Shown: in pieces, positions 9,920 to 37,878 of the stretch
Layout: each line of letters starts with the position of its first letter
How positions within the stretch are numbered: the stretch's first letter is position 1
IMG/VR virus record: IMGVR_UViG_3300028394_002328
Coordinates: 271,036-335,035 of that record
DNA length: 64,000 nucleotides
Direction: 5' to 3' (one strand)
Notes under the pieces: model-generated
Databases searched by the model: none
Seen by the model: only the letters and a program-made list of their open reading frames with translations
Told to the model about the DNA's origin: nothing
Position numbers and translations under genes: made by a program

Positions 9920-9923
9920 AATT

Positions 9924-10082: not shown

Positions 10083-10088
10083 ATTGTT

Positions 10089-10316: not shown

Positions 10317-10320
10317 AATA

Positions 10321-11205: not shown

Positions 11206-11236
11206 ATTTAAATTACTGTCAGTAACGAGGGGCTAT

Positions 11237-11440
11237 CTATTTCATCAAAACCATTACTTTTTCAAAAGTTTCCTCAACTTCCCATGTACCGTGGGGAGGA
11301 GCAAACACAAAAGTAACTTCTTCTGATGTTCCATCTTCACGCAAGATAGTGCTTCTATGTACCGTTGCAATCAAATCTTTTCTAATTGCGACTTTTTTCC
11401 CTTTATGTGCGGGGTTAGCGTTGGTGAGTTTAATAAACAT
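11237..11440 (-). CDS. Small protein, possibly FlbD-like
   Basis: MFIKLT... start and V.ET..KV end resemble the FlbD pattern (weak). Confidence 0.4.
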   Translation of the reverse strand: MFIKLTNANPAHKGKKVAIRKDLIATVHRSTILREDGTSEEVTFVFAPPHGTWEVEETFEKVMVLMK

Positions 11441-11462
11441 TGTATTTTCTTTTAAAGTAAAT

Positions 11463-11538
11463 TGGTGCCCCCTGACGGATTCGAACCGCCGACCTACTGA
11501 TTACAAATCAGTTGCGCTACCAGCTGTGCCAAGAGGGC
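11463..11538 (-). tRNA. tRNA-Thr(UGU)
   Basis: Loop TT TGT AA, CCA. Confidence 0.95.
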
Positions 11539-17338: not shown

Positions 17339-18096
17339 TGAAATATTTGGCCTCATCTGCACATAGTTTAAGTATAGTTCAATTATTATCTGTAATCCTA
17401 ACTATAATAGGGTTCAACTATTTTGATTTTAATTTAGTAAATTGCTCCTTAATATTTTTAGGTTATTTTATTTTTAGTGGTTTGGGTGTAAGCATGACAT
17501 TGCATAGATACTACTCTCACAAATCATTCGAATTTAGATATACATGGTTGAAATGGTTATTTACTATAGTAGCAGTATTAGCCGGACGAGGCAGCCCTGT
17601 TGGATGGGCTTATATACATCGATTACATCATAAATTTTCAGATACAGATAAGGATCCACATGGAGCTAAAACTGTAGGATGGAAAATAATATTCCCAAGT
17701 CTTGTAGAAAATTACAAAGATCCTATAGACAAAAAGGTTATCAAAGACTTCATGAATAAACCTCATATACTAATAAGTAGGTATTACATGGGTTTTATAA
17801 TATTATGGTCTGTTCTATTATTAATTCTGAGTCCTGCTATCTTTTATTTTTTGTATGTCATACCTGTGTTTTTGACTTTTGTAAGTCTAGATTTGTTTGT
17901 TTTATTAACACATAAATACGGGTACATTAGTCATAGTACCACCGACAACAGCAAAAATAATTGGTTTATATCATTGATTCTTTGGGGAGAGGGATGGCAT
18001 AACAATCACCATAACAACCCAAGAAAATGGAATTTAAAAGAAAATTGGTGGGAAATAGATTTATTATCATACTGCATAATGCTTGTAAAAAAATGA
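17338..18096 (+). CDS. Membrane fatty acid desaturase (delta-9-like), copy 1
   Basis: His boxes HRYYSH, HRLHH, HNNHH; DPH; transmembrane segments. Confidence 0.92.
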   Translation: MKYLASSAHSLSIVQLLSVILTIIGFNYFDFNLVNCSLIFLGYFIFSGLGVSMTLHRYYSHKSFEFRYTWLKWLFTIVAVLAGRGSPVGWAYIHRLHHKFSDTDKDPHGAKTVGWKIIFPSLVENYKDPIDKKVIKDFMNKPHILISRYYMGFIILWSVLLLILSPAIFYFLYVIPVFLTFVSLDLFVLLTHKYGYISHSTTDNSKNNWFISLILWGEGWHNNHHNNPRKWNLKENWWEIDLLSYCIMLVKK

Positions 18097-18860
18097 GTAA
18101 ACTTATCTCTAACAATACTCTAGTAACCCAACTATTTTTAATTATAGCAATTATAGGGGGAATCATTGGGCTCTATAACTATGAACTGACTGTAGACCAC
18201 ATGATGTTAATTGTTACTGGGTATTTTTTATATAGTTGCTTAGGCATAGTAATAACATTTCATAGGCAATTGACTCACCAAAGTTATAATACGTATCCTA
18301 TACTAACTAAAGTCTTTAGTTTTTTAGGTTGTATGGCCAATACAGGAAGTTCAATATCTTGGGTTGCTACGCATATTAAACATCATTTACATTCTGATAA
18401 ACCAGGCGATCCTCATAGTCCATGGATTTCAAAATGGAAAATATTCCTTCTTAATTACCCCAGTGACAGTGGAATAAAATGGAGAATGCGTAAACTTATC
18501 AGTGACCCTTTTCATTTATTTTTGCATAAATATTATAATCTCTTGATAGTATTATATAGTTCAGTGTTGTTTATATTAGGAGGTTGGAAATTAATGATAT
18601 TTTTACATTGGATACCAACTGTAGTAGTAGCGGTAATGAGCAATGTTGTAAACTATGCGGGACACAAAGATAACTGGTATGGATCATATAAAAACTTTAA
18701 GTTAAATGACCATAGTGCGAACAGTTGGGTATTCGCTATACCAAGCTGGGGTGAAACTTGGCACAACAATCATCATAGATATCCAAGAAATTATACCACT
18801 AGATATAATTGGTACGAATTAGATATATCTGGGCTAATTATTAAACTTATTAAAAAATAA
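18093..18860 (+). CDS. Membrane fatty acid desaturase (delta-9-like), copy 2 (start MSKLIS)
   Basis: HRQLTH, HIKHH, HNNHH; ATGA overlap with copy 1. Confidence 0.92.
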   Translation: MSKLISNNTLVTQLFLIIAIIGGIIGLYNYELTVDHMMLIVTGYFLYSCLGIVITFHRQLTHQSYNTYPILTKVFSFLGCMANTGSSISWVATHIKHHLHSDKPGDPHSPWISKWKIFLLNYPSDSGIKWRMRKLISDPFHLFLHKYYNLLIVLYSSVLFILGGWKLMIFLHWIPTVVVAVMSNVVNYAGHKDNWYGSYKNFKLNDHSANSWVFAIPSWGETWHNNHHRYPRNYTTRYNWYELDISGLIIKLIKK

Positions 18861-18862: not shown

Positions 18863-19375
18863 ATGGATTATTCAGATTATTTTACAATATTAAACATAGA
18901 TTTTCCAGTAAGGGAAAAACTGTATCATGAATTAAATTATGCTATTTCAAAAAATTTATTTTATATCAGTCCTACTGAACAAGTGCGATATAATATAAAC
19001 AAAGATTTAAGAAAAGAAATACAAGATATAATGCCGTTTAAAATTAGTGATTGTGGATTTTTTAAAAATGTTCCAAATTGGACCTATCCAGTTCATATTG
19101 ATGGGCAAAGACTTTTTGCAGTTAATATGTTAATGGTAGATGATCATGATGATTTTGAGGTAGTATTTTATGTAGATGATTCTAGTTTAGCAAATGATAT
19201 TGATGGCACTGATAAAGAAAAATTTCGCATCCCTTATGCAAAAGACCAACTTGTATTACTAAACACTAAGAAATATCATTCCGTGAGAAATATAAGTAAC
19301 ACTACAACAAGATATCTATTATCTATTGGTAATATAGATACTGGCTATCATGAAATTAAAAATAAATTTATTTGA
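18863..19375 (+). CDS. Cupin/2OG-Fe(II) oxygenase-like protein
   Basis: YPVHID...AVNML...YHSVRN...R. Confidence 0.65.
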   Translation: MDYSDYFTILNIDFPVREKLYHELNYAISKNLFYISPTEQVRYNINKDLRKEIQDIMPFKISDCGFFKNVPNWTYPVHIDGQRLFAVNMLMVDDHDDFEVVFYVDDSSLANDIDGTDKEKFRIPYAKDQLVLLNTKKYHSVRNISNTTTRYLLSIGNIDTGYHEIKNKFI

Positions 19376-20279
19376 TATTTAAATCGTTAAGAATTTTTTG
19401 ATGCTGTTTTAAGAATTTTATACTTTCAATTTTAGCAGCCTCACCAAATATGCCAATTGGGATAGACCCTTTACTTAGCATATCTCTTCTAGTCTCTGCT
19501 GAATTCATTTCAGTTTGAAAGTCATTGATAATTTTTTCTTTAACAGATAAAGGTAATGACTTATCAACAACTACCCCTAAAGTTAATTGCGTTGGAAATT
19601 TTTCTTTATACTCTTCGACCCAAGTATTAACCTTTACACCCGTAAAAGAAATATCGTGAGTAGAAATTATTAAATTTATTTTGTCATTATTGATGAAAGA
19701 GAGTATTGTAGGTAAATTTGCAAAATAGCAATCTACATGTCCTCCCAACAAATCAAGTGTTGGTTTATTTCCACCCGTAATATAGTTAACTATTTGATGA
19801 TCTTTGTTTATTTTATTAAAAAATATTTTAGAAGTTATTTCTTCTACCCCGTTAACAGCGGTACTTGCAAAATTCAAATCCTTTTTATAATTTGATATAT
19901 CACGAACATTTTTAAATCCCAAATCTGTCCTACATGCTAATACAGCCGGACTTGATGCAATTAATCCAATTATCTCAAGGTCATCTACATTGTAAATTAA
20001 ATTTTCCTTATATATAATTTTATTAGTAACAAATGTATTTTCCATGACAACGAATGACATAGATTTTTTTTCTTGCATTTCTCGTATACCAAGCTGACCG
20101 TTTGCCCCTGGTTTATTAGTAACCATATAATTTAATGATAACTTATTTTTTATCAATGCTCTAGCTATAATATCAGTATTACCACCAACCGCATACCCAA
20201 CAATTAGTTCTTGTTGACGATTAGCAAAGCTATTTGTTATTAACCCAAAAATTAAAACTAATTTAATTAGAACTTTCAT
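19368..20279 (-). CDS. Bug/TctC-family substrate-binding protein, copy 2
   Basis: LIVGYAVGGNTDIIAR, NKPGANG, LLGGHVD. Confidence 0.85.
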   Translation of the reverse strand: MKVLIKLVLIFGLITNSFANRQQELIVGYAVGGNTDIIARALIKNKLSLNYMVTNKPGANGQLGIREMQEKKSMSFVVMENTFVTNKIIYKENLIYNVDDLEIIGLIASSPAVLACRTDLGFKNVRDISNYKKDLNFASTAVNGVEEITSKIFFNKINKDHQIVNYITGGNKPTLDLLGGHVDCYFANLPTILSFINNDKINLIISTHDISFTGVKVNTWVEEYKEKFPTQLTLGVVVDKSLPLSVKEKIINDFQTEMNSAETRRDMLSKGSIPIGIFGEAAKIESIKFLKQHQKILNDLNIK

Positions 20280-21462: not shown

Positions 21463-22644
21463 ATGAATCCAAAAACCTGTATGTTTCCTTTCACTTCATT
21501 GAGTGTGTCGCCCCGAGGCGCAATCAGACCATGCTGCATGTATAATAGTCCTGATATGCCCACTTGGGAAAATATCAAAGACTTAACATCGGAAGTACCA
21601 TGGCCTAGCAAATCTATTAAGATACTTCAAGAAAAAATGTTGAGTGATCGCATAGAAGAATTAACTCCATTGTGCAACTCTTGTTGGGAACCTGAAAATG
21701 CAGGACTTGATAGTCATAGATTAAGATACCAAAGATTATTAGCACTTCCAAATGAAGAGTTAATTAAAACCCCTAAACTAACATTTTTAGATTTACAGTT
21801 TGGATACTTATGTAATTTAAGTTGTATTATGTGCCATCCCGAAGAAAGTTCACAGGTTCAAAAAACAATTTTCAAATTAATAGACAATACTTCAAATACT
21901 AAACAAAAAAAAATTTACCAATCTAAGGTAAATTTATATGACAACCATGATTGGACTGTAGATGAAAATTCGTATCAAAAAGTTTTGGAATTATGCCAGC
22001 CTGTCAAGAATATTAAAATATCAGGGGGAGAGCCATTTTTTAATCCAAAATTTAAACCTTTCTTAGAATTTTTATTATCAAAAAAAGTTCCAATTGAATA
22101 CTTGCATGTGACCACAAATTTAACTATATACGATAAAGACATTGTTGAACTGTTAAATAGATTTACTAATGTTAGATTTAGATTCAGTTTAGAATCAATA
22201 GGTAAAGAAGATGACTTTATAAGATGGCCTAGCAGATGGGAGGAAAAACAAGAAAATTTACATGCATATTTAAGTCAGTTACACACAAAAAACATTGTTT
22301 CTAGTACATGCATCCAAAGTTTAAATCTATTTTCTTTTTCAAATACTATTAAATTCTTGAAAAATTTACGTTATAATATCAATATTCAACAACAAATTGC
22401 TGAAAATTCATTAGCTGGGATTTATTACTCCGACAAACAATATATTGAACACTACTTAAAAAATAATGAAGCTAATTTTATATCTAAGTATTTAGAAAAT
22501 ATTATAACCCATATCAATGATCCTTCATTTCAAGTTAATTATTTTCTAGATATGGCCAAACTACAAAATAAAAATATACAAAACGAATTTCCAATTTGGT
22601 ATGAGTTTCATACCAAATATATTAGAGATTCAAATTCAACGTAA
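21463..22644 (+). CDS. Radical SAM protein with N-terminal SPASM/twitch domain
   Basis: N-terminal C..PF...RPCC...C..C; CNLSCIMC; SGGEPF. Confidence 0.88.
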   Translation: MNPKTCMFPFTSLSVSPRGAIRPCCMYNSPDMPTWENIKDLTSEVPWPSKSIKILQEKMLSDRIEELTPLCNSCWEPENAGLDSHRLRYQRLLALPNEELIKTPKLTFLDLQFGYLCNLSCIMCHPEESSQVQKTIFKLIDNTSNTKQKKIYQSKVNLYDNHDWTVDENSYQKVLELCQPVKNIKISGGEPFFNPKFKPFLEFLLSKKVPIEYLHVTTNLTIYDKDIVELLNRFTNVRFRFSLESIGKEDDFIRWPSRWEEKQENLHAYLSQLHTKNIVSSTCIQSLNLFSFSNTIKFLKNLRYNINIQQQIAENSLAGIYYSDKQYIEHYLKNNEANFISKYLENIITHINDPSFQVNYFLDMAKLQNKNIQNEFPIWYEFHTKYIRDSNST

Positions 22645-24701: not shown

Positions 24702-24839
24702 TCACAGAAGTTCGTAGTCCTGTTTACCTACTCCACATTCAGGACAAGCAAAATCATCAGGTAAATCTTCCCAATGACCTTCTAGTTCTTCATTGTGGAC
24801 ATGACCACATACGATACAAACGTGTTCTTGATTAGCCAT
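24702..24839 (-). CDS. Rubredoxin, 45 aa (missed by ORF track)
   Basis: MANQEHVCIVCGHVHNEELEGHWEDLPDDFACPECGVGKQDYELL; two CxxCG motifs. Confidence 0.92.
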   Translation of the reverse strand: MANQEHVCIVCGHVHNEELEGHWEDLPDDFACPECGVGKQDYELL

Positions 24840-25290
24840 GAGTTAACTCCTCCAATTTTTGTAGATAGGCGGCCGCATGACGTTCTTCAACTCGCTTAAG
24901 AGCGGCAAAACGTTTTTCTGCCTTAGCTAAAATTTGTGCAAATTGTTCGGCATGCTCTCGGCTTTCTTCAATTTGTTCACCAAATTCTTTGACTGCATGA
25001 CCATACATTTCATCGGATGCTTGTCCTTGGAACGTTGGATACATTTCCATGTATTCGTAAGTTTCCCCTTCAATGGCTTTAGTTAAACATTCTACAGTAT
25101 TGGGCTTGCCAATAAGTAACTCAAGATGACCCCAAGCATGTTTGAGTTCTTGATCCGCTGTATGCTCAAAATGTTGGGCAATATCTTCATGCCCTTCTTC
25201 ACGGGCGATCCGAGCAAAATAGCGATATTTAATATGAGCCATTGATTCGCCTGCCAATGCGCTCTCTAAGTTCTTAAGTGTGTTTGACAT
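24832..25290 (-). CDS. rbr: Rubrerythrin (ferritin-like di-iron protein)
   Basis: ALAGES..Y, ELKHA, GETYE..MY, ESREHA. Confidence 0.9.
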   Translation of the reverse strand: MSNTLKNLESALAGESMAHIKYRYFARIAREEGHEDIAQHFEHTADQELKHAWGHLELLIGKPNTVECLTKAIEGETYEYMEMYPTFQGQASDEMYGHAVKEFGEQIEESREHAEQFAQILAKAEKRFAALKRVEERHAAAYLQKLEELTHG

Positions 25291-25362: not shown

Positions 25363-25917
25363 TTAAAATGAGTGAGTGTACGCTAGGTTATAGCTGTGAT
25401 TGAAACTGTCACCACGAACTAGGTCATAACGAAGACCAACACTATCATGTTTGGTAATAGCATAGCTAACACCGGCACGAGCAGTATGGGTAGTGTCAAG
25501 ATCACCATTGTTACCAAAACCATTACGGAAACGATAACCAACCTTGGCAGTTAGCTTGTCAAACATAGTGTATGTAACGCCCGGCTCGACACTGTAGTAA
25601 CCAAAATTAGCGCCATTAGTGAACTTTTCACCTGTAGCAACACGGGTGTAAACACCAACTGGGCCAACTGGTAGTGAACCAGTTAAACCAACTTCAAGAC
25701 GGTCGCTAAGTGCTTTAGTGCCAGCCTGTTGGTAAGCTGTAAAGCCAATATCACCGGCAAACATTTTGCCAAATGATTCTTTAACGCTGAGTTGATAGTT
25801 GCTGCTGTCGCGGGCACCACGATCACCCTTTTGGATTTGATCTTCAAGGGTAATGCTAGCTGCATTGGCTAGACCAGTAACAGCCGCTAGTGCTGCGATT
25901 GCGAAAACTTTCTTCAT
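25363..25917 (-). CDS. Outer-membrane beta-barrel (porin-like) protein
   Basis: Signal peptide MKKVFAIAALAAVTGLANA; amphipathic strands; C-terminal YTHSF. Confidence 0.75.
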   Translation of the reverse strand: MKKVFAIAALAAVTGLANAASITLEDQIQKGDRGARDSSNYQLSVKESFGKMFAGDIGFTAYQQAGTKALSDRLEVGLTGSLPVGPVGVYTRVATGEKFTNGANFGYYSVEPGVTYTMFDKLTAKVGYRFRNGFGNNGDLDTTHTARAGVSYAITKHDSVGLRYDLVRGDSFNHSYNLAYTHSF

Positions 25918-25946
25918 ATAGATATCTCCTTTAAAAAGTTTCATAC

Positions 25947-26024: not shown

Positions 26025-26651
26025 ATGAGTGAGATTGTAATACCTTCAATTCGTGAAACATTGCGTATACAACGTTGGGACGATCATAGATATTATCATC
26101 ATAGCAGAATTAATCAATTCTTACATTTGATTTCGGCTACTAGTTTCTTAGTAGCATATGTATATTTGTTTGTCAACCCCGTAATCTCATCTTACATTGC
26201 TTGGTTTGTAGCTATGACTACACGCCAAATTGGGCATTTCTTTTTTGAACCCGATGGTTACGATGAATATAACAAGGCCACTTTTGAATACAAAGAAAAG
26301 ATAAAAGTTGGATTCAATCTCAAACGTAAACGAGTGTTACTAGCATGTTGGGCAGCAGTACCTATACTAGCTTACTTTGATGCCGAACTTTTTAACTTTA
26401 TCATGCCCGATGCTAGCCCAGATACACTGTTTAATCGTATTGGGTGGGGTTGGTTATGGTTGGGTGTAGCAGGTGTAGTATTTAGAATGATTCAACTTAC
26501 TGCTATTGAAAGTCGCCGTACTGCTATCACTTGGTGTATTAAGATCATTACAGATCCATTCCACGATGTCGTTATCTATCGTAAAAGTCCACTATATTTA
26601 ATGCAGGGACAACTCATTGACCCCGACTTAAGACAAGACTACGAAGATTAA
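26025..26651 (+). CDS. Membrane protein, Mpo1/DUF962-like
   Basis: YYHHSRINQFLHLIS and QIGHFFFE His pattern; 4-5 transmembrane segments. Confidence 0.55.
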   Translation: MSEIVIPSIRETLRIQRWDDHRYYHHSRINQFLHLISATSFLVAYVYLFVNPVISSYIAWFVAMTTRQIGHFFFEPDGYDEYNKATFEYKEKIKVGFNLKRKRVLLACWAAVPILAYFDAELFNFIMPDASPDTLFNRIGWGWLWLGVAGVVFRMIQLTAIESRRTAITWCIKIITDPFHDVVIYRKSPLYLMQGQLIDPDLRQDYED

Positions 26652-28289: not shown

Positions 28290-30671
28290 TTATCTCCTAT
28301 ACTGTTGTTCTATCATCTGTTGATGTAAACGGTCTGTTGATAACTGTCTTAACGCTCTAGCATTATCAACTGGGGTTTGGTTCTTATAGATTTCTTTTGG
28401 CTCATACATTTTGCCATCTTTAAGCATCAAATTAGTGTAGTTACTATAGCCAATTGGAGTAGTAGCCATCTTATTAATATCCACATTACCTGCTAGTTCA
28501 TTTGCTGCGACATTAGTTTTTACTTTTTGATTTGACTCCGTAGTAGAATTTGTAGTTACAATTGGTTTTGTTTCAACTACTTCATTAAGTGGGTCTGTGC
28601 GATTAGTCATAAAGCCTGCCGTACTGCTAACCTGTTCTACTTCTGTTTGTCTAGTAAAACTCACTTGCTGTGATGTGGTCTGCTGCTGTTCAACAGGTGC
28701 TGCTGCCATAGCATAAAACAAGGTGTTCTGCGGTTGTACATAGGCAAACGTCATAAAAGATTGTTGATCGGTTGAAGATTGTGAAAATACAGGTGTATTT
28801 GATGTAGTAATGATTGGAGTTACTGCGGTCGCCACTGTTGTATTAGCAGATTTGTTAGGTTGCGGGGGTAGACTACTTGTTACTGTAATTTGAACAGGTT
28901 GAGTTGATTGTACCCTGTTAAAATAAGTTTGAGCAGCAGATATCATGCTATATTGTGAATCATTAGCCGTTGTTGTAGTAGATGACACAGTAGTAACTAC
29001 GGGTGTAGATACTCTCAATGGGGCGGTTTGAACAGTTGTTGCCACAGTGGCAGATTTATTTTCGTTATTAAGGGGTGCTGCATTAACCATTGATAGACCT
29101 GATTGCGCTTGGCTAACAGGCGCACTCGCAGTGGCAGTGTTGGTTTGTCTTTGAGTCTGTACTGATGCATTGGACAGTGTTTGGCTCATTGTAACTGCGG
29201 CTGTAGCAACTGACACAGCCTGTTGTTGAGCCTTGTCACCGGCCGCTGTTGCTTCTGTTGTAGCCATTTGTACTGCGGAATTTTGTATTGCCTGTTCACG
29301 CTGTTGATTCTTAGCAATTATACTTAATGCTGCTGCTACAGTTTTGGATTGAGGACTGCCTTTGGCTGCTGTAGTATTGCTTGTTTGCTGTGGTGTTGAT
29401 TGAGCAATATTGGCAGTGGTAACAGCAGAAGTACTAGCTGTGGGTGGTTCCGCTATTGGAGTGGATGTTGTATTACTGGTACTAAGTTTGGCAGCCATTG
29501 CTTGAGCAAAGCCACTACAATCGGGACTATATAGTGGGTTCTTAACACAAGGATCTGGTGTATAAATCAGACTCATTGAATAATTGCCAATTGAAGAACC
29601 TATACCAGATGCCCCACCTGAAAGTCTAATATTACCAAGTGCGGATTGATTCATGCTACTTGATAGTAGTAGTTGTGAATTTACTGTTCCACTAGTGCCT
29701 TCACTATTGAAACTATGATTTCTTGAAATTATGGTTTGATTACTGCTATTGGTCATTGAGGCACTAGCACTGACATATGCTGGAGTGTTCATCACCCAAC
29801 TACACCCATCTTGATTCCAAGCAGTACATCCAAAGAACCCTTGCCCCACTGTATAATCAAATTTATAATTAAAGCCATGTACTGTAGCACCAAACCCAGC
29901 ACTTTTTAATGCTGTGTTAATAGCAACTACTTGAGTCATTGAAGTAGATACAGCATCAGGATTTGGGGCAAGATTACCGGTAGTTATTATGTTACCAAAT
30001 CCCGAGCAAATAGAACTGTAAGCAGGATTTAATTTACAAGGATCTACAGTGTATAGTAAATTAAAGCTATCAACATGTACTCTAGGCCCATAATATCCTG
30101 CCCAGTTGTTTTGATCCTTACCAGTAAAACTAACGGTTATACTACTAGCTGAGGCGATATCGTAGCGATTATTAAAAAATTGTGTACCCGAAAAAGTAGT
30201 AAAGTTTGGCAAGTTTTGATTATAGTCATAATTGAAACTTTCTACAATGTTACCAGTACTACCTTTTAAGGAAACGTTGCCGGTTAAAGTTCCTCTATTA
30301 CCCTGATAATTATTGAGGTCATTATTGATTTGCCACTGATAACGATATCCACTAAGTTGGACTCCTGCTCCAGAATTTGCCAATGCCTGATTAATCGCAA
30401 TTGTTTGACTTACTGTACGAGGAGCATTGCTAAAAATAATATTACCCGTCGAGGGATTATATGCGGGTGTAGGTCCACCACTCGTTCCACCTGCCTCACC
30501 AGTAACGGTATTGTTCCAAGGTAGTCCACCGCCCAAATTCAGTATATTGTTAGTACTGTTTAGGTTTAGACCTGTAACAGGGTCTATATTTTGACTATTA
30601 GTGGAAGCCGAATAACTTGAAAGCAACAATGCCCAACAAGCTACCGAGACCAATTTTCTTAAGGGTGTCAT
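28290..30671 (-). CDS. Large secreted Ser/Thr/Ala/Gln-rich protein with a duplicated Cys-flanked domain
   Basis: Signal peptide; DPC..NP.YS..C.GF twice; low-complexity linker. Confidence 0.7.
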   Translation of the reverse strand: MTPLRKLVSVACWALLLSSYSASTNSQNIDPVTGLNLNSTNNILNLGGGLPWNNTVTGEAGGTSGGPTPAYNPSTGNIIFSNAPRTVSQTIAINQALANSGAGVQLSGYRYQWQINNDLNNYQGNRGTLTGNVSLKGSTGNIVESFNYDYNQNLPNFTTFSGTQFFNNRYDIASASSITVSFTGKDQNNWAGYYGPRVHVDSFNLLYTVDPCKLNPAYSSICSGFGNIITTGNLAPNPDAVSTSMTQVVAINTALKSAGFGATVHGFNYKFDYTVGQGFFGCTAWNQDGCSWVMNTPAYVSASASMTNSSNQTIISRNHSFNSEGTSGTVNSQLLLSSSMNQSALGNIRLSGGASGIGSSIGNYSMSLIYTPDPCVKNPLYSPDCSGFAQAMAAKLSTSNTTSTPIAEPPTASTSAVTTANIAQSTPQQTSNTTAAKGSPQSKTVAAALSIIAKNQQREQAIQNSAVQMATTEATAAGDKAQQQAVSVATAAVTMSQTLSNASVQTQRQTNTATASAPVSQAQSGLSMVNAAPLNNENKSATVATTVQTAPLRVSTPVVTTVSSTTTTANDSQYSMISAAQTYFNRVQSTQPVQITVTSSLPPQPNKSANTTVATAVTPIITTSNTPVFSQSSTDQQSFMTFAYVQPQNTLFYAMAAAPVEQQQTTSQQVSFTRQTEVEQVSSTAGFMTNRTDPLNEVVETKPIVTTNSTTESNQKVKTNVAANELAGNVDINKMATTPIGYSNYTNLMLKDGKMYEPKEIYKNQTPVDNARALRQLSTDRLHQQMIEQQYRR

Positions 30672-32124
30672 CTTCTTTTACCTCTACTGCCACTGGCATT
30701 TTTTCTGGGTTGGCTTCCCATGCTGCTCGTGCCGCATCTCCAATTTTACCTTCATACGGGCAAGGTGTGCCTGCGCTCCACATAGCATCAAACACACGGC
30801 GATCCTGACACATTGTGGCAACTGCTGCTACCTTCATACCCATATCGTAAAGTGTTTTGGCTAACTTTAGTCTTTCGCAATTAACATCTCTAATAGTAGA
30901 ACCACTACTAACACCAAAGATTTGTGTTTGAACAGCACCACTTACACCAGTGGTACATAGGTCAGCATTACCACCACTCATCATAGTAGGAGCGATTGCT
31001 GTAGGAGGGGGTTGTATAACTCTTTGTGTAATCTCTGACGAATTAATATTTCGGTTAGTCATGTCACCAGTTTGTACATTTTGGTTGACATTGTTACTAT
31101 TATTAGTATTACTACTAGTACTTGAACTTAAACTAGTGTTTACATTGTTATTGTTGTTGGTCATTGTACCTGAGTTAATGTTATTATTGGTATTAACATT
31201 ACTGTTTGTGCTGGTGCTGTTATTAATATTTCTATTAGTCATGCTGCCACTAGTGATATTATTGTTAGTATTAACAGCAGTGCTAGTGCTTGCATTGTTA
31301 TTGTTATAAGTCATTGTGCCAGTATTAACATTCACGTTTCTGTTAGTACTTGTGCTGGTACTAACATTATTATTGTTATTGGTCATCGTACCATAATTGT
31401 AATTGGTACTGTTATTAGTATTGACATTTCTGCTTGTACTAGTATTAACATTTTTATTGACATTATTGCTAGTACTAGCGTTATTGTTATTGTATGTCAT
31501 TGTACCGCTGTTGATATTGTTGTTGGTATTGACATTGTTACTAGTACTAGTGCTGGTACTGGCATTATTGTTATTGTATGTCATTGTACCTGAATTAATA
31601 TTGTTATTGGTATTGACACTGGTACTTGTGTTGGTATTGATATTACGGTTAGTCATATCACCACTATTGACATTATTGTTGTTATATGTCATTGTACCAC
31701 TATTAACATTGTTATTGGTATTAACACTAGTACTAACGTTATTATTGTTGTTAGTCATTGTTCCAGTGTTCACATTGTTATTGTTATAAGTAACAGTTCC
31801 GCTGTTAACATTGTTATTGTTATTGTTATAAGTAACAGTTCCGCTGTTGACATTGTTGTTGGTAACCGTACCGCTTTGGATATTATTATTTGTATTAACG
31901 CTGGTATTGACGTTATTGCTGTTGCTGTTTACTGTACTAGTGCTCGTACTATTGCTGCTACTAGTACTGGTATTTGTTGTATTGACACTGCTGGTACTAT
32001 TACTAGTGCTATTAGTATCCACCAAAGTTTTAGAATCATAACTACCTTGATTAATTAAAGTTTGACTATAGGCCGTACCCGTAAAAAAGACGATACTGGT
32101 AGATACCAATATTTTTTTAAGCAT
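30598..32124 (-). CDS. Secreted Asn/Thr-rich repeat protein with a Cys-containing C-terminal domain and TM anchor
   Basis: Signal peptide; about 13 G-[TDS]-[MV]-T repeats within poly-Asn; NCERLKL..GTPCP domain. Confidence 0.75.
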   Translation of the reverse strand: MLKKILVSTSIVFFTGTAYSQTLINQGSYDSKTLVDTNSTSNSTSSVNTTNTSTSSSNSTSTSTVNSNSNNVNTSVNTNNNIQSGTVTNNNVNSGTVTYNNNNNNVNSGTVTYNNNNVNTGTMTNNNNNVSTSVNTNNNVNSGTMTYNNNNVNSGDMTNRNINTNTSTSVNTNNNINSGTMTYNNNNASTSTSTSNNVNTNNNINSGTMTYNNNNASTSNNVNKNVNTSTSRNVNTNNSTNYNYGTMTNNNNNVSTSTSTNRNVNVNTGTMTYNNNNASTSTAVNTNNNITSGSMTNRNINNSTSTNSNVNTNNNINSGTMTNNNNNVNTSLSSSTSSNTNNSNNVNQNVQTGDMTNRNINSSEITQRVIQPPPTAIAPTMMSGGNADLCTTGVSGAVQTQIFGVSSGSTIRDVNCERLKLAKTLYDMGMKVAAVATMCQDRRVFDAMWSAGTPCPYEGKIGDAARAAWEANPEKMPVAVEVKEDDTLKKIGLGSLLGIVAFKLFGFH

Positions 32125-32175: not shown

Positions 32176-33183
32176 TTAACATTTATCTACTAAGTTATCT
32201 CTAAATATACGCCAACACTCTTCCCAACTCCAACGTAGACTAGCTTCTTCTACACGAACACGATCTAATCGCAAACATTGGTCAATAGCAGTCTTTAAAT
32301 CCTCATCCATATAACCTGTTAGTCCCTGATCTATAACATCTTTAGGTCCAGTTACTGGATATGCTGCTACTGGTGTGCCACAAGCCATAGCTTCAATCAT
32401 TACTATACCAAACGTATCCCAATAACTAGGGAATACGAATACATCAGCATCGGCGTAATACTTAGCTAGTTCTGCCCCACGTTTTACTCCTACGAATTCA
32501 ACATCAGGATATTCACGCTCCATACGACGGCGGCATGGACCATCACCTACGACTATTTTGGTAGCACTTGGATAGTATAATCTACAAAAATCATCTAAGT
32601 TTTTTTCTTTGCTGACACGCCCTACATTTAACAATATGGGCTGTGATAGTTCTGTAGCAGTTCTAGTGCTGCTGCTAAATATGGTACGATCAACCCCGCG
32701 AGTCCAAGGCTTGATGTCGGTTCTAAATCCACGACTAGCCAAATCATCAACCATGCTTTGTGTAGTGGTCAGTACACGACCACTATGTTTATGAAACCAA
32801 CGCAAGTAACGATAACTCCAGTCAGTGGGTATGCCTGCAATTTTGTTTATGGCTTCGGGGAAACGAGTATGGTAGCTAGTATTATAACGCCATCCCCAAT
32901 AGTCCATCCAGCAACGGGCAGCAAAGCCCACTGGACCTTCTGTAGCAATGTGTATGTAGTCGGGATTTACTTTTTCAATAATCCTGCCAATGCCCCAGGT
33001 CCAACTAAGTTTGATTTCACCATAGCCAGGACAGGGAATATTAACAAACTGCCGGGGATCAAGATAAACAAAATCATAGCCATCCCGCTCAGCCAAAACT
33101 TCCAGGTTATGAAAGGTAGTAACAACACCATTAACCTGCGTTGGTTCATTGTCGGTTATGATTAATACTGTCTTCATTTTCAC
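32176..33183 (-). CDS. agt: GT4 glycosyltransferase, Agt-like glycolipid synthase
   Basis: TD..P.QVNGVVTT, HIATEGPVG, SYHTRFPE, VGRVSKEKNL, FPS..DTFGIVMIEAMACGTPVAAY. Confidence 0.75.
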   Translation of the reverse strand: MKMKTVLIITDNEPTQVNGVVTTFHNLEVLAERDGYDFVYLDPRQFVNIPCPGYGEIKLSWTWGIGRIIEKVNPDYIHIATEGPVGFAARCWMDYWGWRYNTSYHTRFPEAINKIAGIPTDWSYRYLRWFHKHSGRVLTTTQSMVDDLASRGFRTDIKPWTRGVDRTIFSSSTRTATELSQPILLNVGRVSKEKNLDDFCRLYYPSATKIVVGDGPCRRRMEREYPDVEFVGVKRGAELAKYYADADVFVFPSYWDTFGIVMIEAMACGTPVAAYPVTGPKDVIDQGLTGYMDEDLKTAIDQCLRLDRVRVEEASLRWSWEECWRIFRDNLVDKC

Positions 33184-33931
33184 GCACCTCTGCCCATGTT
33201 ACGATTTCCCAGCGACCATCCCAATGTTCAACTAGTGCTGTACAACTTTCACACCAGTCACCATCGTTCATGTAGATTACGCCGTTGATTTCTTTGATTT
33301 CAGCCTTATGTATATGCCCACAGATCACACCATCGTAGCCCTTCTTTTTGCAATAACCGGCTAGATTTTGTTCAAATTGAAACATAAAGTCTACCGCTTT
33401 TTTGACCCGGTGCTTAAGGTACAAGCTAAGGCTCCAGTAGCCAAAACCCAAACGATGACGAATCCAATTGAATTTAGTATTGATATTGAGTACGCAGTCA
33501 TATGCTTTGTCTCCTAATATGCTGAGCCAAGGGGCCAGCCTAGTAATACCATCAAATAAATCACCATGAACTACAAGATACCTTTTTCCATCTATACCGG
33601 TGTGAATAGCCTGATTACAGATTTTAATACGACCAAAACTAACACCATATGGTATAAGTGGGCGTAAAAATTCATCATGATTGCCTGCCACATAAACTAC
33701 TTGTGTTCCGCGTTTGGCATGACCTAATACACGGCGAATTACATTGGTATGACTTTGATGCCACTTTAGAGTGTTCTGTTTCATTTTCCACGCATCTATA
33801 ATATCGCCTACTAGATACAACGTTTCGCAACTATTATGTTTTAAAAAGTTGTTTAGATAGTCTGCTTTACAGGCTTTAGTACCGAGGTGTACATCACTAA
33901 TAGAGATTGTACGGTAAGTTGTTTGCGGCAT
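33146..33931 (-). CDS. plcP: PlcP-like metallophosphoesterase (phospholipase C; LpxH-like family)
   Basis: SDVHLG, GDIID, GNHDE, HGDLFD, CGHIH, NDGDWCESCTAL; coupled to the GT4 gene. Confidence 0.8.
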   Translation of the reverse strand: MPQTTYRTISISDVHLGTKACKADYLNNFLKHNSCETLYLVGDIIDAWKMKQNTLKWHQSHTNVIRRVLGHAKRGTQVVYVAGNHDEFLRPLIPYGVSFGRIKICNQAIHTGIDGKRYLVVHGDLFDGITRLAPWLSILGDKAYDCVLNINTKFNWIRHRLGFGYWSLSLYLKHRVKKAVDFMFQFEQNLAGYCKKKGYDGVICGHIHKAEIKEINGVIYMNDGDWCESCTALVEHWDGRWEIVTWAEVRENEDSINHNRQ

Positions 33932-33936
33932 AATAC

Positions 33937-33971
33937 TATTTAATGTTTAATATATTACAAAGCTGTTACAA
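33937..33971 (-). promoter_or_regulatory. Pho box plus TAAATA hybrid promoter for plcP-agt
   Basis: TTGTAAC-AGCT-TTGTAAT-ATAT-TAAACAT-TAAATA. Confidence 0.75.
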
Positions 33972-33973: not shown

Positions 33974-33999
33974 ATAAAAAAAGAGCCATATGGCCCTTT
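33974..33999 (-). terminator. Intrinsic terminator
   Basis: GGGCC-ATAT-GGCTC followed by a T run. Confidence 0.65.
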
Positions 34000-34082: not shown

Positions 34083-34724
34083 TTACTTTCCCAATAAACT
34101 ATCAACCTTCGCTTCAGCAACATTCAACCGATGCTCAATATCATCTAGTGCAGGATCTGCTGGAGCGGAAACTGCTTCAAATATTTGTTGATGAACTTCA
34201 GAATTAACTGCTTCTCCTGTTGCTGTTGAAACAATATGAGCTACCGCAGCGGCAATTTCTTCTGTACCTGCAGTTGGTGCAGGCATTTCAGCAACTGCTG
34301 CTGTAATAGCGGCTGTAATTGCTTCAGGGTCTGTGACAACTTCAGGCTCTGCTGTAACAACTGCTAGTACCGCTGCTTTTACAATATCAGCAACTTCAGG
34401 GTTAACAATTGCATCTGCTTCGTGTTGAGCAGCTACTACATCGCCAACAATGCCTGCGGCTTCTGCATGGTCAGCACTTGGTGAAAGTGCTAGTACATCT
34501 TCAACAGAAACTGGTGCTTCATCAGCTACGGAATAAACAATGGCGTCAATATGGCTCTCAGTTTTTTCAGCGATCAAATGATCAACTTGAACTTCAACAA
34601 CTGACAATCTGGTGTCTAGTTCTTCAATGCTTGTGGCATAATCTGTGTTAACTTCTGTGCCAGTTAGTGTTGCTAACTTAGCTTCTACTGCTACTAATCT
34701 TGCGGCTAAATCTTGTAATCTCAT
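34083..34724 (-). CDS. Acidic Ala/Val-rich hypothetical protein (start MRLQD)
   Basis: AAGGAG Shine-Dalgarno; similar RL.V.EAK motifs at both ends. Confidence 0.7.
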   Translation of the reverse strand: MRLQDLAARLVAVEAKLATLTGTEVNTDYATSIEELDTRLSVVEVQVDHLIAEKTESHIDAIVYSVADEAPVSVEDVLALSPSADHAEAAGIVGDVVAAQHEADAIVNPEVADIVKAAVLAVVTAEPEVVTDPEAITAAITAAVAEMPAPTAGTEEIAAAVAHIVSTATGEAVNSEVHQQIFEAVSAPADPALDDIEHRLNVAEAKVDSLLGK

Positions 34725-34809
34725 GGGTTGCTCCTTTAGGTTAGGTGAGTGAATCATGTCCACTCACCCTTATTTAACTGCTACTATATTAAAGTATTAT
34801 TACAAAATA

Positions 34810-36384
34810 TCAGAAACTCAATAATAGTAGCTGTCCACCTTCAATTAATTCAGCAGCATTAGCACCAGTTGCTGCTTTGTGATTTTGATCAACCAATAAG
34901 AAGTAACGCTTGCCATCAGTACGACCTAAGATACTGGTGATTTCAATGATACCACTGGATTCTTCGTCATTGGTCTCAGTTCCAACAACACCTGTGTAAT
35001 AATCACCAAACAGCTTCTCATCATGTTGAGCAAGTAGTGTTAGTGCCTTGGTAACAGGATTGTATCTCCAAATCTTACCATTGTGATTGTTACCACCCAC
35101 ATCTTCTTGTAGAATGATTGTGCCATCGCTAGCAACAGTCATGTTGTCAAACATCTGTGTGCCATGAACACGACCGGCAACAGTAACTGTTTCAGTACCA
35201 TCGAGCACCATTTCAAGGATACCACCCGATTCAGGACGGGTTAAATCAGTAAATGTCATGCTCCAAAGGCGTGTGCGACCAACTTGAGCAGTATTAGTAA
35301 TACTGGTATTGATCTTGCCCCCGGTGTTGTCTTTAGCAGCATCTACTGTGTTGGTTGTTACAAAGTAGTAGCGGTTCTTGTTAACTGTATCCCAAGCACC
35401 ATCTTCTGGACGCAAGAAACTTGTACCAGCAACACCAGTTACAGGAACATTGGGAACAAAACTAAATGTAGCAGTCTTGTTGACTAGTCCTAAACCAGCA
35501 TCAGTAGCAGTGGTTTCATTAGCAGCAACACCACCAACATTGACCACAGCACGATACAGCGTACCATTGGTTAGGCCTGCTTTATCAACTTCAGTAGCAC
35601 CAGTCTTGTTCTTAGTGCCGACATACATATAAACACCATTGCTGCCACTGTCGCTATTGGCCATAACAATGGTCTTATCGCCGCTGTTAGGATGTGCGAT
35701 TAGATTTTCCCAGCCTACACCAAATGTGGTAAATCCACCAAAGTGTGGGAGAATGTATGCTTTGCCTTTGTCTGCTCCACTAGCCACAATAGCAACACCC
35801 CGACCCATTGTAACAGTACCGTTAGCGGTTTCTTCACCAGTCATAAACATTTTAACCGAAGAACCATTGCCTGTTGCTGAGTTGAAGAAAGCGCCGGCTG
35901 CTGGTAGATCGGCTGAACAGAAACGCTGAAATGCTACAGCAGTTTGCTCGGCCCAAGCACCATTGACCTGTGCATAAACTTTTTTCATTAGGTCACTACC
36001 GCTCTTGACCTGTAGAGTAGTTTTATCAATAACCCACTCACTAACAAAAGCACCAATACCACCATGAGCACGGGCAATACCAACAGTGTTGGCCAGTTCA
36101 TGAGCCATTAGCACGGTGAATGTGTTGTCACCATTGTCGTAAGCACCTAGCCCATCCGGGATACCTACCATGCGATAAGTGCCAACAGCGTCACCAACGG
36201 TTAAGATACTGGCAACTTTTACGCTGCTGTCAATTGGTGTGATATAAGGATCTGCTGAACTACTAGTTGCTTTGCCTGATGTAAAACCAGTAACTTCTTT
36301 GGGTGCTGCTACAGTGGTGTCATCGCTACCACATGCTGTTAATAGAGCCGTTGCTACGGCTACTGCTAGAACGGTATATTTCAT
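34810..36384 (-). CDS. phoX: PhoX-family alkaline phosphatase, lipoprotein
   Basis: Lipobox LTAC; RFCSA, WEN, RPEDG, FDN, QED, EESSG motifs. Confidence 0.75.
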   Translation of the reverse strand: MKYTVLAVAVATALLTACGSDDTTVAAPKEVTGFTSGKATSSSADPYITPIDSSVKVASILTVGDAVGTYRMVGIPDGLGAYDNGDNTFTVLMAHELANTVGIARAHGGIGAFVSEWVIDKTTLQVKSGSDLMKKVYAQVNGAWAEQTAVAFQRFCSADLPAAGAFFNSATGNGSSVKMFMTGEETANGTVTMGRGVAIVASGADKGKAYILPHFGGFTTFGVGWENLIAHPNSGDKTIVMANSDSGSNGVYMYVGTKNKTGATEVDKAGLTNGTLYRAVVNVGGVAANETTATDAGLGLVNKTATFSFVPNVPVTGVAGTSFLRPEDGAWDTVNKNRYYFVTTNTVDAAKDNTGGKINTSITNTAQVGRTRLWSMTFTDLTRPESGGILEMVLDGTETVTVAGRVHGTQMFDNMTVASDGTIILQEDVGGNNHNGKIWRYNPVTKALTLLAQHDEKLFGDYYTGVVGTETNDEESSGIIEITSILGRTDGKRYFLLVDQNHKAATGANAAELIEGGQLLLLSF

Positions 36385-37428: not shown

Positions 37429-37463
37429 TATTTAATAATAATTATGTTACAGGAATATTACAA
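37429..37463 (-). promoter_or_regulatory. Pho box plus TAAATA hybrid promoter for pstS-phoX
   Basis: TTGTAAT-ATTC-CTGTAAC-ATAA-TTATTAT-TAAATA. Confidence 0.8.
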
Positions 37464-37494: not shown

Positions 37495-37878
37495 TTATTG
37501 AACAGTCCGTTTTGATTTGTAATCTTCTATTGCCGATTTAATCGCATCTTCTGCTAAGATTGAGCAGTGGATTTTGACTGGCGGGAGAGCGAGTTCTTCC
37601 GCAATCTGTGTGTTTCTAATTGTTGCTGCCTCGTCGAGGGTTTTGCCTTTAACCCACTCTGTGACAAGACTTGAGCTAGCAATCGCTGACCCGCACCCAT
37701 ACGTTTTAAATCTAGCATCTTCTATTACTCCATTCTCATTTACTTTAATTTGAAGTTTCATCACATCTCCGCATGCCGGGGCTCCGACTAGTCCGGTGCC
37801 TATTGTATCGTCAATTTCAAATTTTCCAACATTGCGTGGGTTTTCATAATGATCAACTACTTGAGGTGAATAAGCCAT
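37495..37878 (-). CDS. iscU: Fe-S cluster scaffold IscU
   Basis: DHYENPRNVG, APACGD, FKTYGCGSAIASSS, LPPVKIHC. Confidence 0.97.
   Translation of the reverse strand: MAYSPQVVDHYENPRNVGKFEIDDTIGTGLVGAPACGDVMKLQIKVNENGVIEDARFKTYGCGSAIASSSLVTEWVKGKTLDEAATIRNTQIAEELALPPVKIHCSILAEDAIKSAIEDYKSKRTVQ

What the first reader, a model, noticed from the sequence alone, without database searches (positions are those of the whole stretch)
32176..33971. Phage-encoded plcP-agt operon: a phospholipid-to-glycolipid remodelling kit
Seen: a PlcP-type metallophosphoesterase gene overlaps a GT4 glycosyltransferase gene, behind a Pho box. Known: PlcP plus Agt is the bacterial P-starvation pathway (SAR11, Roseobacter, Agrobacterium) that cleaves phospholipids to diacylglycerol and makes P-free glycolipids. 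Inferred: the phage makes the host liberate membrane phosphate for viral DNA synthesis and patches the membrane with glycolipid. Phage pstS is familiar; I do not recall a complete regulated plcP-agt unit in a phage, but I could not search.
Basis: partly seen in the sequence, partly recalled or inferred. Interest (0 to 1): 0.88.

Follow-up and report, generated by a model that had tools for sequence, protein, structure and literature searches.

The report
Phage-borne phosphate-starvation membrane lipid remodelling genes
A 335-kb phage carries intact, phosphate-starvation-controlled copies of the two bacterial enzymes that swap membrane phospholipids for phosphorus-free glycolipids, and the same gene pair is common but apparently unreported in uncultured large aquatic phages.

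Summary
On the minus strand, a 261-aa metallophosphoesterase (33146-33931) overlaps a 333-aa GT4 glycosyltransferase (32176-33177) by 32 nt. A Pho-box-like direct repeat (33954-33971) sits upstream.

The phosphoesterase is a PlcP, not LpxH. It is 55% identical to the P. aeruginosa PA3219 orthologue and 19% to E. coli LpxH. It scores on the LpxH models as validated PlcPs do.

The GT4 is Agt-type. It is 41-42% identical to Agt1 and carries all published GTcp/Agt motifs.

The same promoter (two TGTAAY repeats, N10, TTAAAT) also precedes pstS-phoX and an unknown 213-aa gene. That gives 3 hits against 0 in 100 shuffles. The half-sites are conserved in relatives while the spacers vary.

The window is phage: portal, capsid, ribonucleotide reductase (RNR) and 17 tRNAs on a 335-kb IMG/VR contig. 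Host contamination is excluded.

Of 80 viral contigs with this GT4, 76 have plcP directly upstream and the other 4 are truncated. No deposited phage genome has the pair. Pelagibacter phage Mosig has plcP alone, labelled LpxH. I found no paper describing phage PlcP.

Enzyme activity and the purpose (freeing lipid phosphorus for phage DNA) are inferred. Verdict: a new member of a known kind, of moderately high interest.

The parts
37430..37463 (-). Pho-box promoter of pstS: TTGTAAT-ATTC-CTGTAAC (37463-37446), N10, then the -10 TTAAAT (37435-37430)
   Evidence: conserved upstream of pstS in L009, L001 and L086
36410..37390 (-). pstS, periplasmic phosphate-binding protein with a Sec signal peptide
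   Evidence: NCBIfam PstS equivalogs score 405 and 338 bits, above their cut-offs; PHROG phosphate transporter subunit
34810..36384 (-). phoX-family alkaline phosphatase, a lipoprotein (lipobox LTAC), 25 nt downstream of pstS and probably in the same transcript
   Evidence: Homologues at 49-85% identity carry PF05787/DUF839 and are named alkaline phosphatase PhoX by NCBI. The protein itself hits no Pfam or PDB entry directly.
34772..34805 (-). Third Pho-box promoter: TTGTAAT-AATA-CTTTAAT, N10, TTAAAT
   Evidence: 1 mismatch to the pattern
34083..34724 (-). Conserved acidic all-helical protein of 213 aa, function unknown. The true start is the ATG at 34724, not the GTG at 34763.
   Evidence: Homologues have a stop just upstream of the conserved MRL start. 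It lies next to plcP in two diverged PlcP clades. Alignment A2. The AF2 model has pLDDT 86.8 and no PDB match.
33980..33999 (-). Intrinsic terminator hairpin followed by a U7 tail; it ends the upstream unit just before the plcP promoter
   Evidence: RNA fold -11.4 kcal/mol, z = -2.8; conserved in L010, L011 and L001
33938..33971 (-). Pho-box promoter of plcP: TTGTAAC-AGCT-TTGTAAT (33971-33954), N10, then the -10 TTAAAT (33943-33938). The ATG follows 6 nt later, so the mRNA is probably leaderless.
33146..33931 (-). plcP: PlcP-type metallophosphoesterase (phospholipase C of lipid renovation), 261 aa, no signal peptide
32176..33177 (-). agt: Agt/GTcp-type GT4 diacylglycerol glycosyltransferase, 333 aa, overlapping plcP by 32 nt
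30598..32124 (-). Secreted Asn/Thr/Ser-repeat protein of 508 aa with a conserved C-terminal domain and membrane anchor. It starts 51 nt after agt with no terminator between, so it may be co-transcribed. Function unknown.
   Evidence: syntenic in L001, L009-L011 and L105; phrog_20531, unknown function
28290..30671 (-). Secreted Ser/Thr/Asn/Gln-rich protein of 793 aa, overlapping the previous gene by 74 nt. Function unknown.

Best explanation
This is a phage auxiliary metabolic module for membrane lipid renovation. It belongs to a phage-borne Pho-regulon island of three units: pstS-phoX, a 213-aa unknown, and plcP-agt.

Proposed mechanism:
1. In a phosphate-starved host, phosphorylated host PhoB binds the Pho boxes that replace the -35 element of three phage promoters and switches them on. 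This step is inferred from promoter anatomy and conservation.
2. PlcP, a cytoplasmic di-metal phosphoesterase with an LpxH-like fold and a helical lipid-binding cap, cleaves host glycerophospholipids into diacylglycerol and a phospho-headgroup. This is inferred from 55% and 48% identity to validated PlcPs.
3. Agt transfers glucose and/or glucuronic acid from a UDP-sugar to the diacylglycerol. The product is a phosphorus-free glycolipid that keeps the bilayer intact. This is inferred from the motifs and from 41-42% identity to validated Agt1.
4. The released headgroup phosphorus enters the host pool and is available for phage nucleotide synthesis. PstS and PhoX meanwhile scavenge external phosphorus.

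The purpose in step 4 is the least certain part. One 335,035-bp genome holds about 670,000 phosphorus atoms. By textbook estimates, a bacterial membrane holds 10^6 to 2x10^7 phospholipids. That is worth several to tens of phage genomes.
For: Phage origin:
- The window has a portal, major head protein and RNR and 17 tRNAs.
- It is 100% identical to a 335-kb IMG/VR contig.
- The major capsid protein (MCP) is 66-67% identical to those of jumbo phages PA5oct and Vibrio phage 2.275.O.
- The island is syntenic in independent viral contigs of 200 kb, 102 kb and 26 kb.

PlcP identity:
- It is 55.0% identical over 93% of its length to the P. aeruginosa protein whose neighbours (GT, cyaB) identify it as PA3219. 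PA3219 is PlcP (PMC8528852).
- It is 48% identical to the S. meliloti orthologue.
- Validated PlcPs are only 46-47% identical to each other.
- LpxH equivalog models give 44 and 33 bits against cut-offs of 134 and 190. Validated PlcPs score the same way (55/44.5 and 38/39), whereas E. coli LpxH scores 364/389.
- In the tree, LpxH sits on a branch of 5 substitutions per site. The window protein sits in an all-viral clade (SH-aLRT 99) next to the clade holding PA3219 and S. meliloti PlcP.
- All seven metal ligands are invariant.
- The model's best structural matches are LpxH-lipid X complexes, and it has a helical insertion at the position of the LpxH cap.

Agt identity:
- GRVSKEKN and FPSYWDTFG match the published GTcp motifs, including the diagnostic Asp in place of Glu.
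- His103, Thr159-Arg160, Gly81/Gly84, Glu262 and Trp318 are all present.
- It is 41-42% identical over its full length to the plcP-adjacent GTs of P. aeruginosa (Agt1), Ralstonia and Sphingomonas.

Linkage: 76 of 80 viral GT4 loci have plcP directly upstream on the same strand, and the other 4 are truncated.

Regulation:
- Three promoter copies occur in the window against 0 in 100 shuffles.
- The half-sites and the -10 are conserved while spacers vary.
- The box is found in 25 of 72 viral plcP-agt loci against 0.5% of random windows, at fixed positions of -39/-40.
- A 513-kb phage has GTGTCAC-AGAA-TTGTCAT, close to the canonical CTGTCAT-N4-CTGTCAT.
Against: - No enzymatic, lipidomic or expression data exist for any phage copy.
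- I could not fetch the validated MED193 and HTCC7211 sequences, so the tree holds only two validated PlcPs, and they lie on one side of the window's clade.
- The residue mapping to GTcp is by motif, not by direct alignment.
- The Pho-box half-sites (TTGTAAY) match the CTGTCAT consensus at only 5 of 7 positions, and the host and its PhoB are unknown.
- Many related viral loci lack a recognisable box. Some carry a sigma-70-type promoter instead, so Pho control is not universal.
- PlcP yields phospho-headgroups, not free phosphate. No cytoplasmic phosphatase for them is evident in the island.
- The sugar specificity of Agt is unknown.
Confidence: 0.72

Rival explanations
1. The enzymes are as described, but the purpose differs. 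Remodelling mainly changes envelope properties: it blocks superinfecting phages, alters grazing or antimicrobial susceptibility, or stabilises the membrane through a long latent period. Supplying phosphorus for phage DNA is not the main point.
For: Lipid renovation changes grazing susceptibility and phage attachment in bacteria (titles and abstracts of PMC9457565 and PMC9938194). The window also carries two fatty-acid desaturases and secreted envelope-type proteins directly downstream of agt, which suggests a broader membrane-modifying theme. Some lineages drive plcP from a sigma-70-type promoter rather than a Pho box.
Against: In this lineage the unit shares its promoter with pstS-phoX, the archetypal phosphorus-acquisition genes. 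pstS lies within 6 kb of plcP-agt in about 25 of 80 viral loci. The two purposes are not mutually exclusive.
Confidence: 0.18
2. The GT4 glycosylates something other than diacylglycerol, such as the adjacent Ser/Thr/Asn-rich secreted proteins (as SdgA/GtfA-type GT4s do), LPS or DNA. The phosphoesterase would then have an unrelated role.
For: Two very Ser/Thr/Asn-rich secreted proteins follow agt with no terminator between. There is a weak NCBIfam hit to SdgA at 27 bits against a cut-off of 800.
Against: The GT4 is coupled to plcP in 76 of 76 assessable viral loci, whereas the repeat proteins occur in only the 5 closest (all but one of the six closest loci). It has the Agt-specific motifs, including Asp for Glu, and is 41-42% identical to validated Agt1. 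It has no signal peptide, whereas the repeat proteins are exported.
Confidence: 0.05
3. The phosphoesterase is LpxH (UDP-2,3-diacylglucosamine hydrolase) acting in lipid A synthesis, as database annotations say.
For: Automated names in JGI, GenBank and RefSeq call it LpxH. The best structural match is LpxH.
Against: It scores 44 and 33 bits against LpxH equivalog cut-offs of 134 and 190, while E. coli LpxH scores 364 and 389. It is 19% identical to E. coli LpxH. The LpxH branch in the tree is 5 substitutions per site long. Validated PlcPs carry the same mis-annotation.
Confidence: 0.02
4. The block is host DNA mis-assembled or mis-binned into a viral contig.
For: The genes have cellular homologues. 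IMG/VR also contains some false-positive contigs; for example, a few 'viral' loci nest among SAR86 sequences.
Against: Phage tRNAs lie on one side and RNR, capsid and portal genes on the other, all on one contig. GC content is continuous with the flanks. The same synteny occurs in several independent assemblies. The nearest cellular PlcP found is only 55% identical, whereas viral relatives are 69-97% identical and form their own clade. Contigs of 300-513 kb carrying it have phage-like gene content.
Confidence: 0.02

Closest known systems
Bacterial PlcP-Agt lipid renovation operon (P. aeruginosa PA3219-PA3218, SAR11 HTCC7211, B. cenocepacia plcP-agt-dagK, Agrobacterium Agt)
   Same: Gene order is plcP then agt, with overlapping or abutting ORFs, behind a Pho box. 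Identity is 55% to PA3219 and 41-42% to Agt1. The metal ligands and the Agt motifs are the same.
   Different: It is encoded by a 335-kb lytic-type phage in an all-viral clade and has no dagK. The promoter half-sites are TTGTAAY rather than CTGTCAT, and the transcript is apparently leaderless. It sits with pstS-phoX and a conserved unknown 213-aa gene.
Cyanophage pstS/phoA auxiliary metabolic genes controlled by the host PhoR/PhoB system (my knowledge: Zeng and Chisholm 2012)
   Same: These are phage-borne Pho-regulon genes that host phosphate-starvation signalling is expected to switch on. pstS is present here too.
   Different: The cyanophage genes acquire external phosphorus. This module would mobilise the host's own membrane phosphorus and rebuild the membrane. 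PhoX replaces PhoA.
Pelagibacter phage Mosig EXVC030M gene Mosig_00120
   Same: It is a PlcP-family gene in a cultured phage, 48.6% identical, next to pstS.
   Different: It has no agt and is transcribed divergently from pstS. It is annotated as putative LpxH and is not discussed as PlcP in the papers I searched.
LpxH (lipid A pathway)
   Same: It shares the calcineurin-like fold with an inserted helical cap that binds lipid. LpxH-lipid X complexes are the best PDB matches (TM 0.54-0.63).
   Different: Identity is 19%. The protein fails the LpxH equivalog models.

Membership tests
PlcP (phospholipase C of phosphorus-stress lipid renovation) | Calcineurin-like metallophosphoesterase with a complete di-metal site | tested here: met
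   Pfam Metallophos. D13, H15, D43, N84, H122, H206 and H208 are invariant with validated PlcPs and LpxH.
PlcP (phospholipase C of phosphorus-stress lipid renovation) | Closer to experimentally validated PlcPs than to LpxH | tested here: met
   55% to the PA3219 orthologue, 48% to the S. meliloti orthologue and 19% to E. coli LpxH. Tree. The LpxH HMM scores equal those of validated PlcPs.
PlcP (phospholipase C of phosphorus-stress lipid renovation) | Linked to a non-phosphorus-lipid synthesis gene (the 'type 2' plcP-agt context of PMC4796936) | tested here: met
   agt overlaps plcP by 32 nt. 76 of 76 assessable viral loci show the same arrangement.
PlcP (phospholipase C of phosphorus-stress lipid renovation) | Hydrolyses PE, PG or PC to diacylglycerol plus a phospho-headgroup | not testable with these tools
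   Needs an enzyme assay or lipidomics.
Agt/GTcp clade of GT4 (diacylglycerol glucosyl/glucuronosyl transferase) | GT-B GT4 with UDP-sugar motifs GRVAXEKN and FPSXTDTFG, and catalytic Asp in place of the usual GT4 Glu | tested here: met
   GRVSKEKN at residue 186 and FPSYWDTFG at residue 249, against the motifs published in PMC8231724.
Agt/GTcp clade of GT4 (diacylglycerol glucosyl/glucuronosyl transferase) | Catalytic His and the DAG-binding Thr-Arg and Trp shown by mutagenesis in GTcp | tested here: met
   H103, T159-R160 and W318 lie at offsets of 1-3 residues from the GTcp numbering. The mapping is by motif; the GTcp sequence was not in hand.
Agt/GTcp clade of GT4 (diacylglycerol glucosyl/glucuronosyl transferase) | Full-length similarity to a validated Agt at the level validated Agts share | tested here: met
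   41.2% to the P. aeruginosa Agt1 orthologue. Agt1 is 41% identical to MED193 Agt. Other GT4s are below 25%.
Agt/GTcp clade of GT4 (diacylglycerol glucosyl/glucuronosyl transferase) | Makes MGDG and/or GADG from DAG and a UDP-sugar | not testable with these tools
   Needs heterologous expression and lipid mass spectrometry.
Pho-regulon (PhoB-dependent) promoter | Two 7-bp direct repeats with a 4-bp spacer resembling CTGTCAT, in place of the -35 and about 10 bp upstream of the -10 | tested here: met
   TTGTAAC-AGCT-TTGTAAT, N10, TTAAAT. Relatives have CTGTCAC and TTGTCAT half-sites.
Pho-regulon (PhoB-dependent) promoter | The same element precedes other Pho genes and is conserved by selection | tested here: met
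   It precedes pstS(-phoX) and the 213-aa gene, with 3 hits against 0 in 100 shuffles. Relatives show a footprint of conserved half-sites with variable spacers. It occurs in 25 of 72 loci against a 0.5% background.
Pho-regulon (PhoB-dependent) promoter | PhoB binding and induction at low phosphate | not testable with these tools
   Needs a gel-shift assay (EMSA), a reporter or transcriptomics. The host is unknown.
LpxH | Reaches the curated LpxH equivalog score | tested here: not met
   44 and 33 bits against cut-offs of 134 and 190. The positive control, E. coli LpxH, scores 364 and 389.
Phage auxiliary metabolic gene | Lies inside a phage genome, flanked by phage genes, and is conserved among related phages | tested here: met

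The most novel reading that the evidence does not exclude
Large aquatic phages routinely carry a Pho-controlled kit that cannibalises the infected cell's own membrane phospholipids as a phosphorus reserve for building very large genomes, and replaces them with glycolipid. A previously unknown 213-aa helical protein would serve as a dedicated partner of PlcP. If so, viral infection would contribute to the glycolipid signal, and to the plcP gene counts, that are now read as bacterial phosphorus-stress markers in lakes and oceans.
Probability: 0.35. Interest if true: 0.78.

Novelty: new member of a known kind. Interest (0 to 1): 0.62.

Why it matters
Phage phosphorus genes known so far (pstS, phoA, phoH) deal with uptake or are of unclear function. 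A phage-encoded, starvation-switched pathway that dismantles and rebuilds the host membrane would be a new class of auxiliary metabolism.

- It would show how phages with genomes of 300-500 kb can replicate in phosphorus-poor water.
- It bears on how plcP abundance and glycolipids are interpreted as markers of bacterial phosphorus stress, since part of the environmental plcP pool is viral.
- It corrects a systematic mis-annotation (LpxH) in phage and bacterial records.
- It gives three compact Pho-type promoters, one apparently leaderless, and a conserved unknown partner protein to test.

Tried and rejected
- Megablast of 10 kb of the window against deposited phages found no match.
- The genome-contig scan with PlcP returned only SAR86 at 44-45%, because the peptide patterns were too specific.
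- Cluster look-ups gave no organism names.
- Pfam and PDB sequence searches found nothing for the 524-aa protein. It was identified only through its homologues.
- For the 213-aa protein, Pfam and PHROGs gave only noise, and the confident AF2 model has no PDB fold match at E<=0.001.
- Pfam and PHROGs did not identify the two Ser/Thr/Asn-rich proteins.
- Eight literature searches or readings for phage-encoded PlcP, or for LpxH-like genes in pelagiphages, jumbo phages or phosphorus AMG surveys, found none. Subscription journals are not covered.
- I considered and rejected LpxH, a protein or DNA glycosyltransferase, and host contamination (see the rival explanations).
Full report
**What is there**

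All genes of interest lie on the minus strand.
- A 261-aa ORF (33146-33931) carries calcineurin-like metallophosphoesterase domains.
- It overlaps by 32 nt a 333-aa ORF (32176-33177). That ORF starts at an ATG behind a GAGGTG Shine-Dalgarno sequence and has both GT4 domains.
- Neither protein has a signal peptide.
- Upstream of the first gene lie a terminator hairpin with a U7 tail (33999-33980), the direct repeat TTGTAAC-AGCT-TTGTAAT (33971-33954), 10 nt, TTAAAT, 6 nt and the ATG.

**It is a phage**
- The window holds a portal, a major head protein and ribonucleotide reductase, plus 17 tRNA genes.
- It is identical to part of a 335,035-bp IMG/VR contig.
- Its capsid protein is 66-67% identical to those of cultured jumbo phages: Vibrio phage 2.275.O, Pseudomonas phage PA5oct and Sinorhizobium phage Phosso.
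- GC content is continuous across the block.
- The same gene order recurs in independent viral contigs of 200, 102, 36, 26 and 13 kb.

Host contamination is excluded.

**The phosphoesterase is PlcP, not LpxH**

PLSDB contains mislabelled chromosomal pieces, and these supplied named references.
- The window protein is 55.0% identical over 93% of its length to a P. aeruginosa protein. That protein's neighbours, an overlapping glycosyltransferase and then cyaB, identify it as PA3219.
- It is 48% identical to the S. meliloti orthologue, which sits beside the AHL synthase and LuxR genes.
- PA3219 and PA3218 are the validated PlcP and Agt1. PA3219 is only 46-47% identical to the other validated PlcPs (PMC8528852).
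- Against NCBI's two LpxH equivalog models, the window protein scores 44 and 33 bits (cut-offs 134 and 190).
- Controls behave as expected. The PA3219 orthologue scores 55/44.5, S. meliloti PlcP scores 38/39, and E. coli LpxH scores 364/389.
- In a maximum-likelihood tree, E. coli LpxH sits on a branch of about 5 substitutions per site. The window protein lies in an all-viral clade of ten (SH-aLRT 99). That clade joins the clade containing PA3219 and S. meliloti PlcP, and a third clade containing Pelagibacter phage Mosig and SAR86. Sebastian et al. counted SAR86 homologues as PlcP (PMC4796936).
- All seven metal ligands are invariant, and identity to LpxH is 19%.
- An AlphaFold model (pLDDT 80.7) finds LpxH-lipid X complexes as its best PDB matches. 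It has a helical insertion (residues ~124-196) at the position of the LpxH lipid-binding cap.

So it works like a lipid-directed metallophosphoesterase but is not a member of LpxH.

**The GT4 is Agt-type**

Wei et al. (PMC8231724) defined the Agt/GTcp clade by these features:
- the motifs GRVAXEKN and FPSXTDTFG;
- a catalytic His-Asp pair, with Asp replacing the usual GT4 Glu;
- DAG-binding Thr-Arg and Trp residues.

The window protein has GRVSKEKN, FPSYWDTFG, H103, T159-R160, G81/G84, E262 and W318, at offsets of 1-3 residues from GTcp. It is 333 aa long against 334 for GTcp. It is 41-42% identical over its full length to the plcP-adjacent GTs of P. aeruginosa (Agt1), Ralstonia and Sphingomonas. 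That is the level at which validated Agts resemble each other. No NCBIfam equivalog exists for Agt, and validated Agt1 gives the same weak hit profile.

**Regulation and the larger island**

With at most one mismatch, the pattern TGTAAY-N4-YTGTAAY-N10-TTAAAT occurs three times in the window and never in 100 shuffles. The three sites lie upstream of:
- pstS (37463-37430);
- a small unknown gene (34805-34772);
- plcP (33971-33938).

pstS passes the PstS equivalog cut-offs. The 524-aa lipoprotein that follows it after 25 nt belongs to the PhoX/DUF839 alkaline phosphatases, judged through its homologues.

In relatives the half-sites and the -10 stay put while the N4 and N10 spacers and the flanks change. 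One relative has CTGTCAC, and a 513-kb phage has GTGTCAC-AGAA-TTGTCAT, close to the canonical CTGTCAT-N4-CTGTCAT.

Across 72 distinct viral plcP-agt loci, 25 have such a box within 120 nt of plcP. Only 0.5% of random windows do. Almost all boxes sit at -39/-40 or about -50. The fixed arrangement of -10, six nucleotides and ATG suggests a leaderless plcP mRNA; this is an inference. Other lineages use a sigma-70-type promoter with an SD sequence, or place plcP inside a longer operon.

**Distribution and novelty**
- A peptide-pattern scan found 86 IMG/VR contigs with a PlcP relative and 138 with the Agt-type GT4.
- Of the best 80 GT4 loci, 76 have plcP immediately upstream on the same strand. The other four have less than 400 nt of upstream sequence.
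- About 25 of the 80 also have pstS within 6 kb.
- Contigs of 302, 379 and 513 kb carrying close PlcP relatives have phage-like gene content. The 379- and 513-kb contigs carry the pair; the 302-kb one has plcP alone.
- Among 50,697 deposited phage genomes, only five have any PlcP relative. Among these, Mosig reaches 48.6% and sits next to pstS, and S-SRM01 reaches 35.6%; both are labelled LpxH. None of the 50,697 has an Agt-type GT4 above 32% identity.
- Searches of open-access papers and bioRxiv found no description of a phage-encoded PlcP or PlcP-Agt.

**Mechanism and limits**

Shown by sequence: gene identity, linkage, promoter architecture and its conservation, and phage carriage.

Inferred: PhoB dependence, phospholipase C and glycosyl-DAG activities, sugar specificity, the leaderless transcript, and the purpose.

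A 335-kb genome needs about 670,000 phosphorus atoms per copy. By textbook estimates, membrane phospholipid (roughly 10^6 to 2x10^7 molecules per cell) is a reserve worth several to tens of genomes. This makes the phosphorus-mobilisation reading quantitatively sensible. PlcP releases phospho-headgroups, however, so host phosphatases are still required.

The main rival keeps the enzymes but puts envelope change, such as superinfection or grazing resistance, ahead of phosphorus supply. The window's two fatty-acid desaturases and the secreted repeat proteins downstream of agt fit a wider membrane theme.

**Verdict**

This is a real, well-supported phage copy of a known bacterial pathway. It is embedded in a three-promoter Pho island, is widespread in uncultured large phages, and is apparently undescribed.

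Noticed in passing
window 34083-34724 (-); L019 2270-2911, L034 5850-6491, L150, L168, L176, L179: A conserved, acidic, Ala/Val-rich all-helical protein of 213 aa with its own Pho-box promoter. It lies immediately next to plcP in two diverged PlcP clades, upstream in one and downstream in the other. The AF2 model is confident (pLDDT 86.8) but has no PDB fold match. It may be a PlcP partner.
   Followed up: partly
window 28290-32124 (-): Two secreted proteins follow agt with no terminator. One is 508 aa with Asn/Thr/Ser repeats and a C-terminal anchor. The other is 793 aa and rich in Ser/Thr/Asn/Gln. Both are syntenic only in the closest relatives. The C-terminal domain of the first recurs near plcP in more distant viral contigs (L016, L037, L048, L066, L081).
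   Followed up: partly
window 17338-18096 and 18027-18860 (+): Two adjacent, overlapping fatty-acid desaturase genes. A desaturase and a rubrerythrin also lie a few kb from plcP in the 513-kb phage contig L092. This suggests a wider membrane-lipid theme.
   Followed up: no
window 1746-11538 (-): A cluster of 17 tRNA genes interspersed with small ORFs.
   Followed up: no
L088 (Pelagibacter phage Mosig) 5842-5991: The intergenic region between the divergent pstS and the PlcP-like gene holds TTTAACA-AAAA-CTTAACA and further TTAAC repeats. This may be a SAR11-type or cyanobacterial-type Pho box. The gene is annotated as LpxH.
   Followed up: no
L092/L093 10910-11908: The Agt of the 513-kb phage has Glu instead of the diagnostic Asp (WETFG). 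In GTcp this change cut activity by more than 90% (PMC8231724).
   Followed up: no
L112, L114, L139 upstream of plcP: These viral lineages drive plcP from a canonical TTGACT...TATAAT promoter with a GGAGG SD sequence instead of a Pho box. They may express it constitutively or early.
   Followed up: no
L180 1859-7236: A 379-kb phage-like contig carries curli genes (CsgF, CsgG, a curlin-repeat protein) directly upstream of plcP-agt, and an adenylate/guanylate cyclase with a CHASE2 domain downstream.
   Followed up: no
window 37495-37878, 24832-25290, 14676-16145, 21463-22644, 25363-25944, 19368-20279: Other host-like genes are present: NifU-type Fe-S scaffold, rubrerythrin, two radical-SAM proteins, a small porin-like protein (weak hit) and a TctC-family binding protein.
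   Followed up: no
window 26025-26651 (+): A weak Mpo1-like hit (23 bits, just under the cut-off). An Mpo1-like gene also lies two genes from plcP-agt in P. aeruginosa (L090 7420-7737).
   Followed up: no
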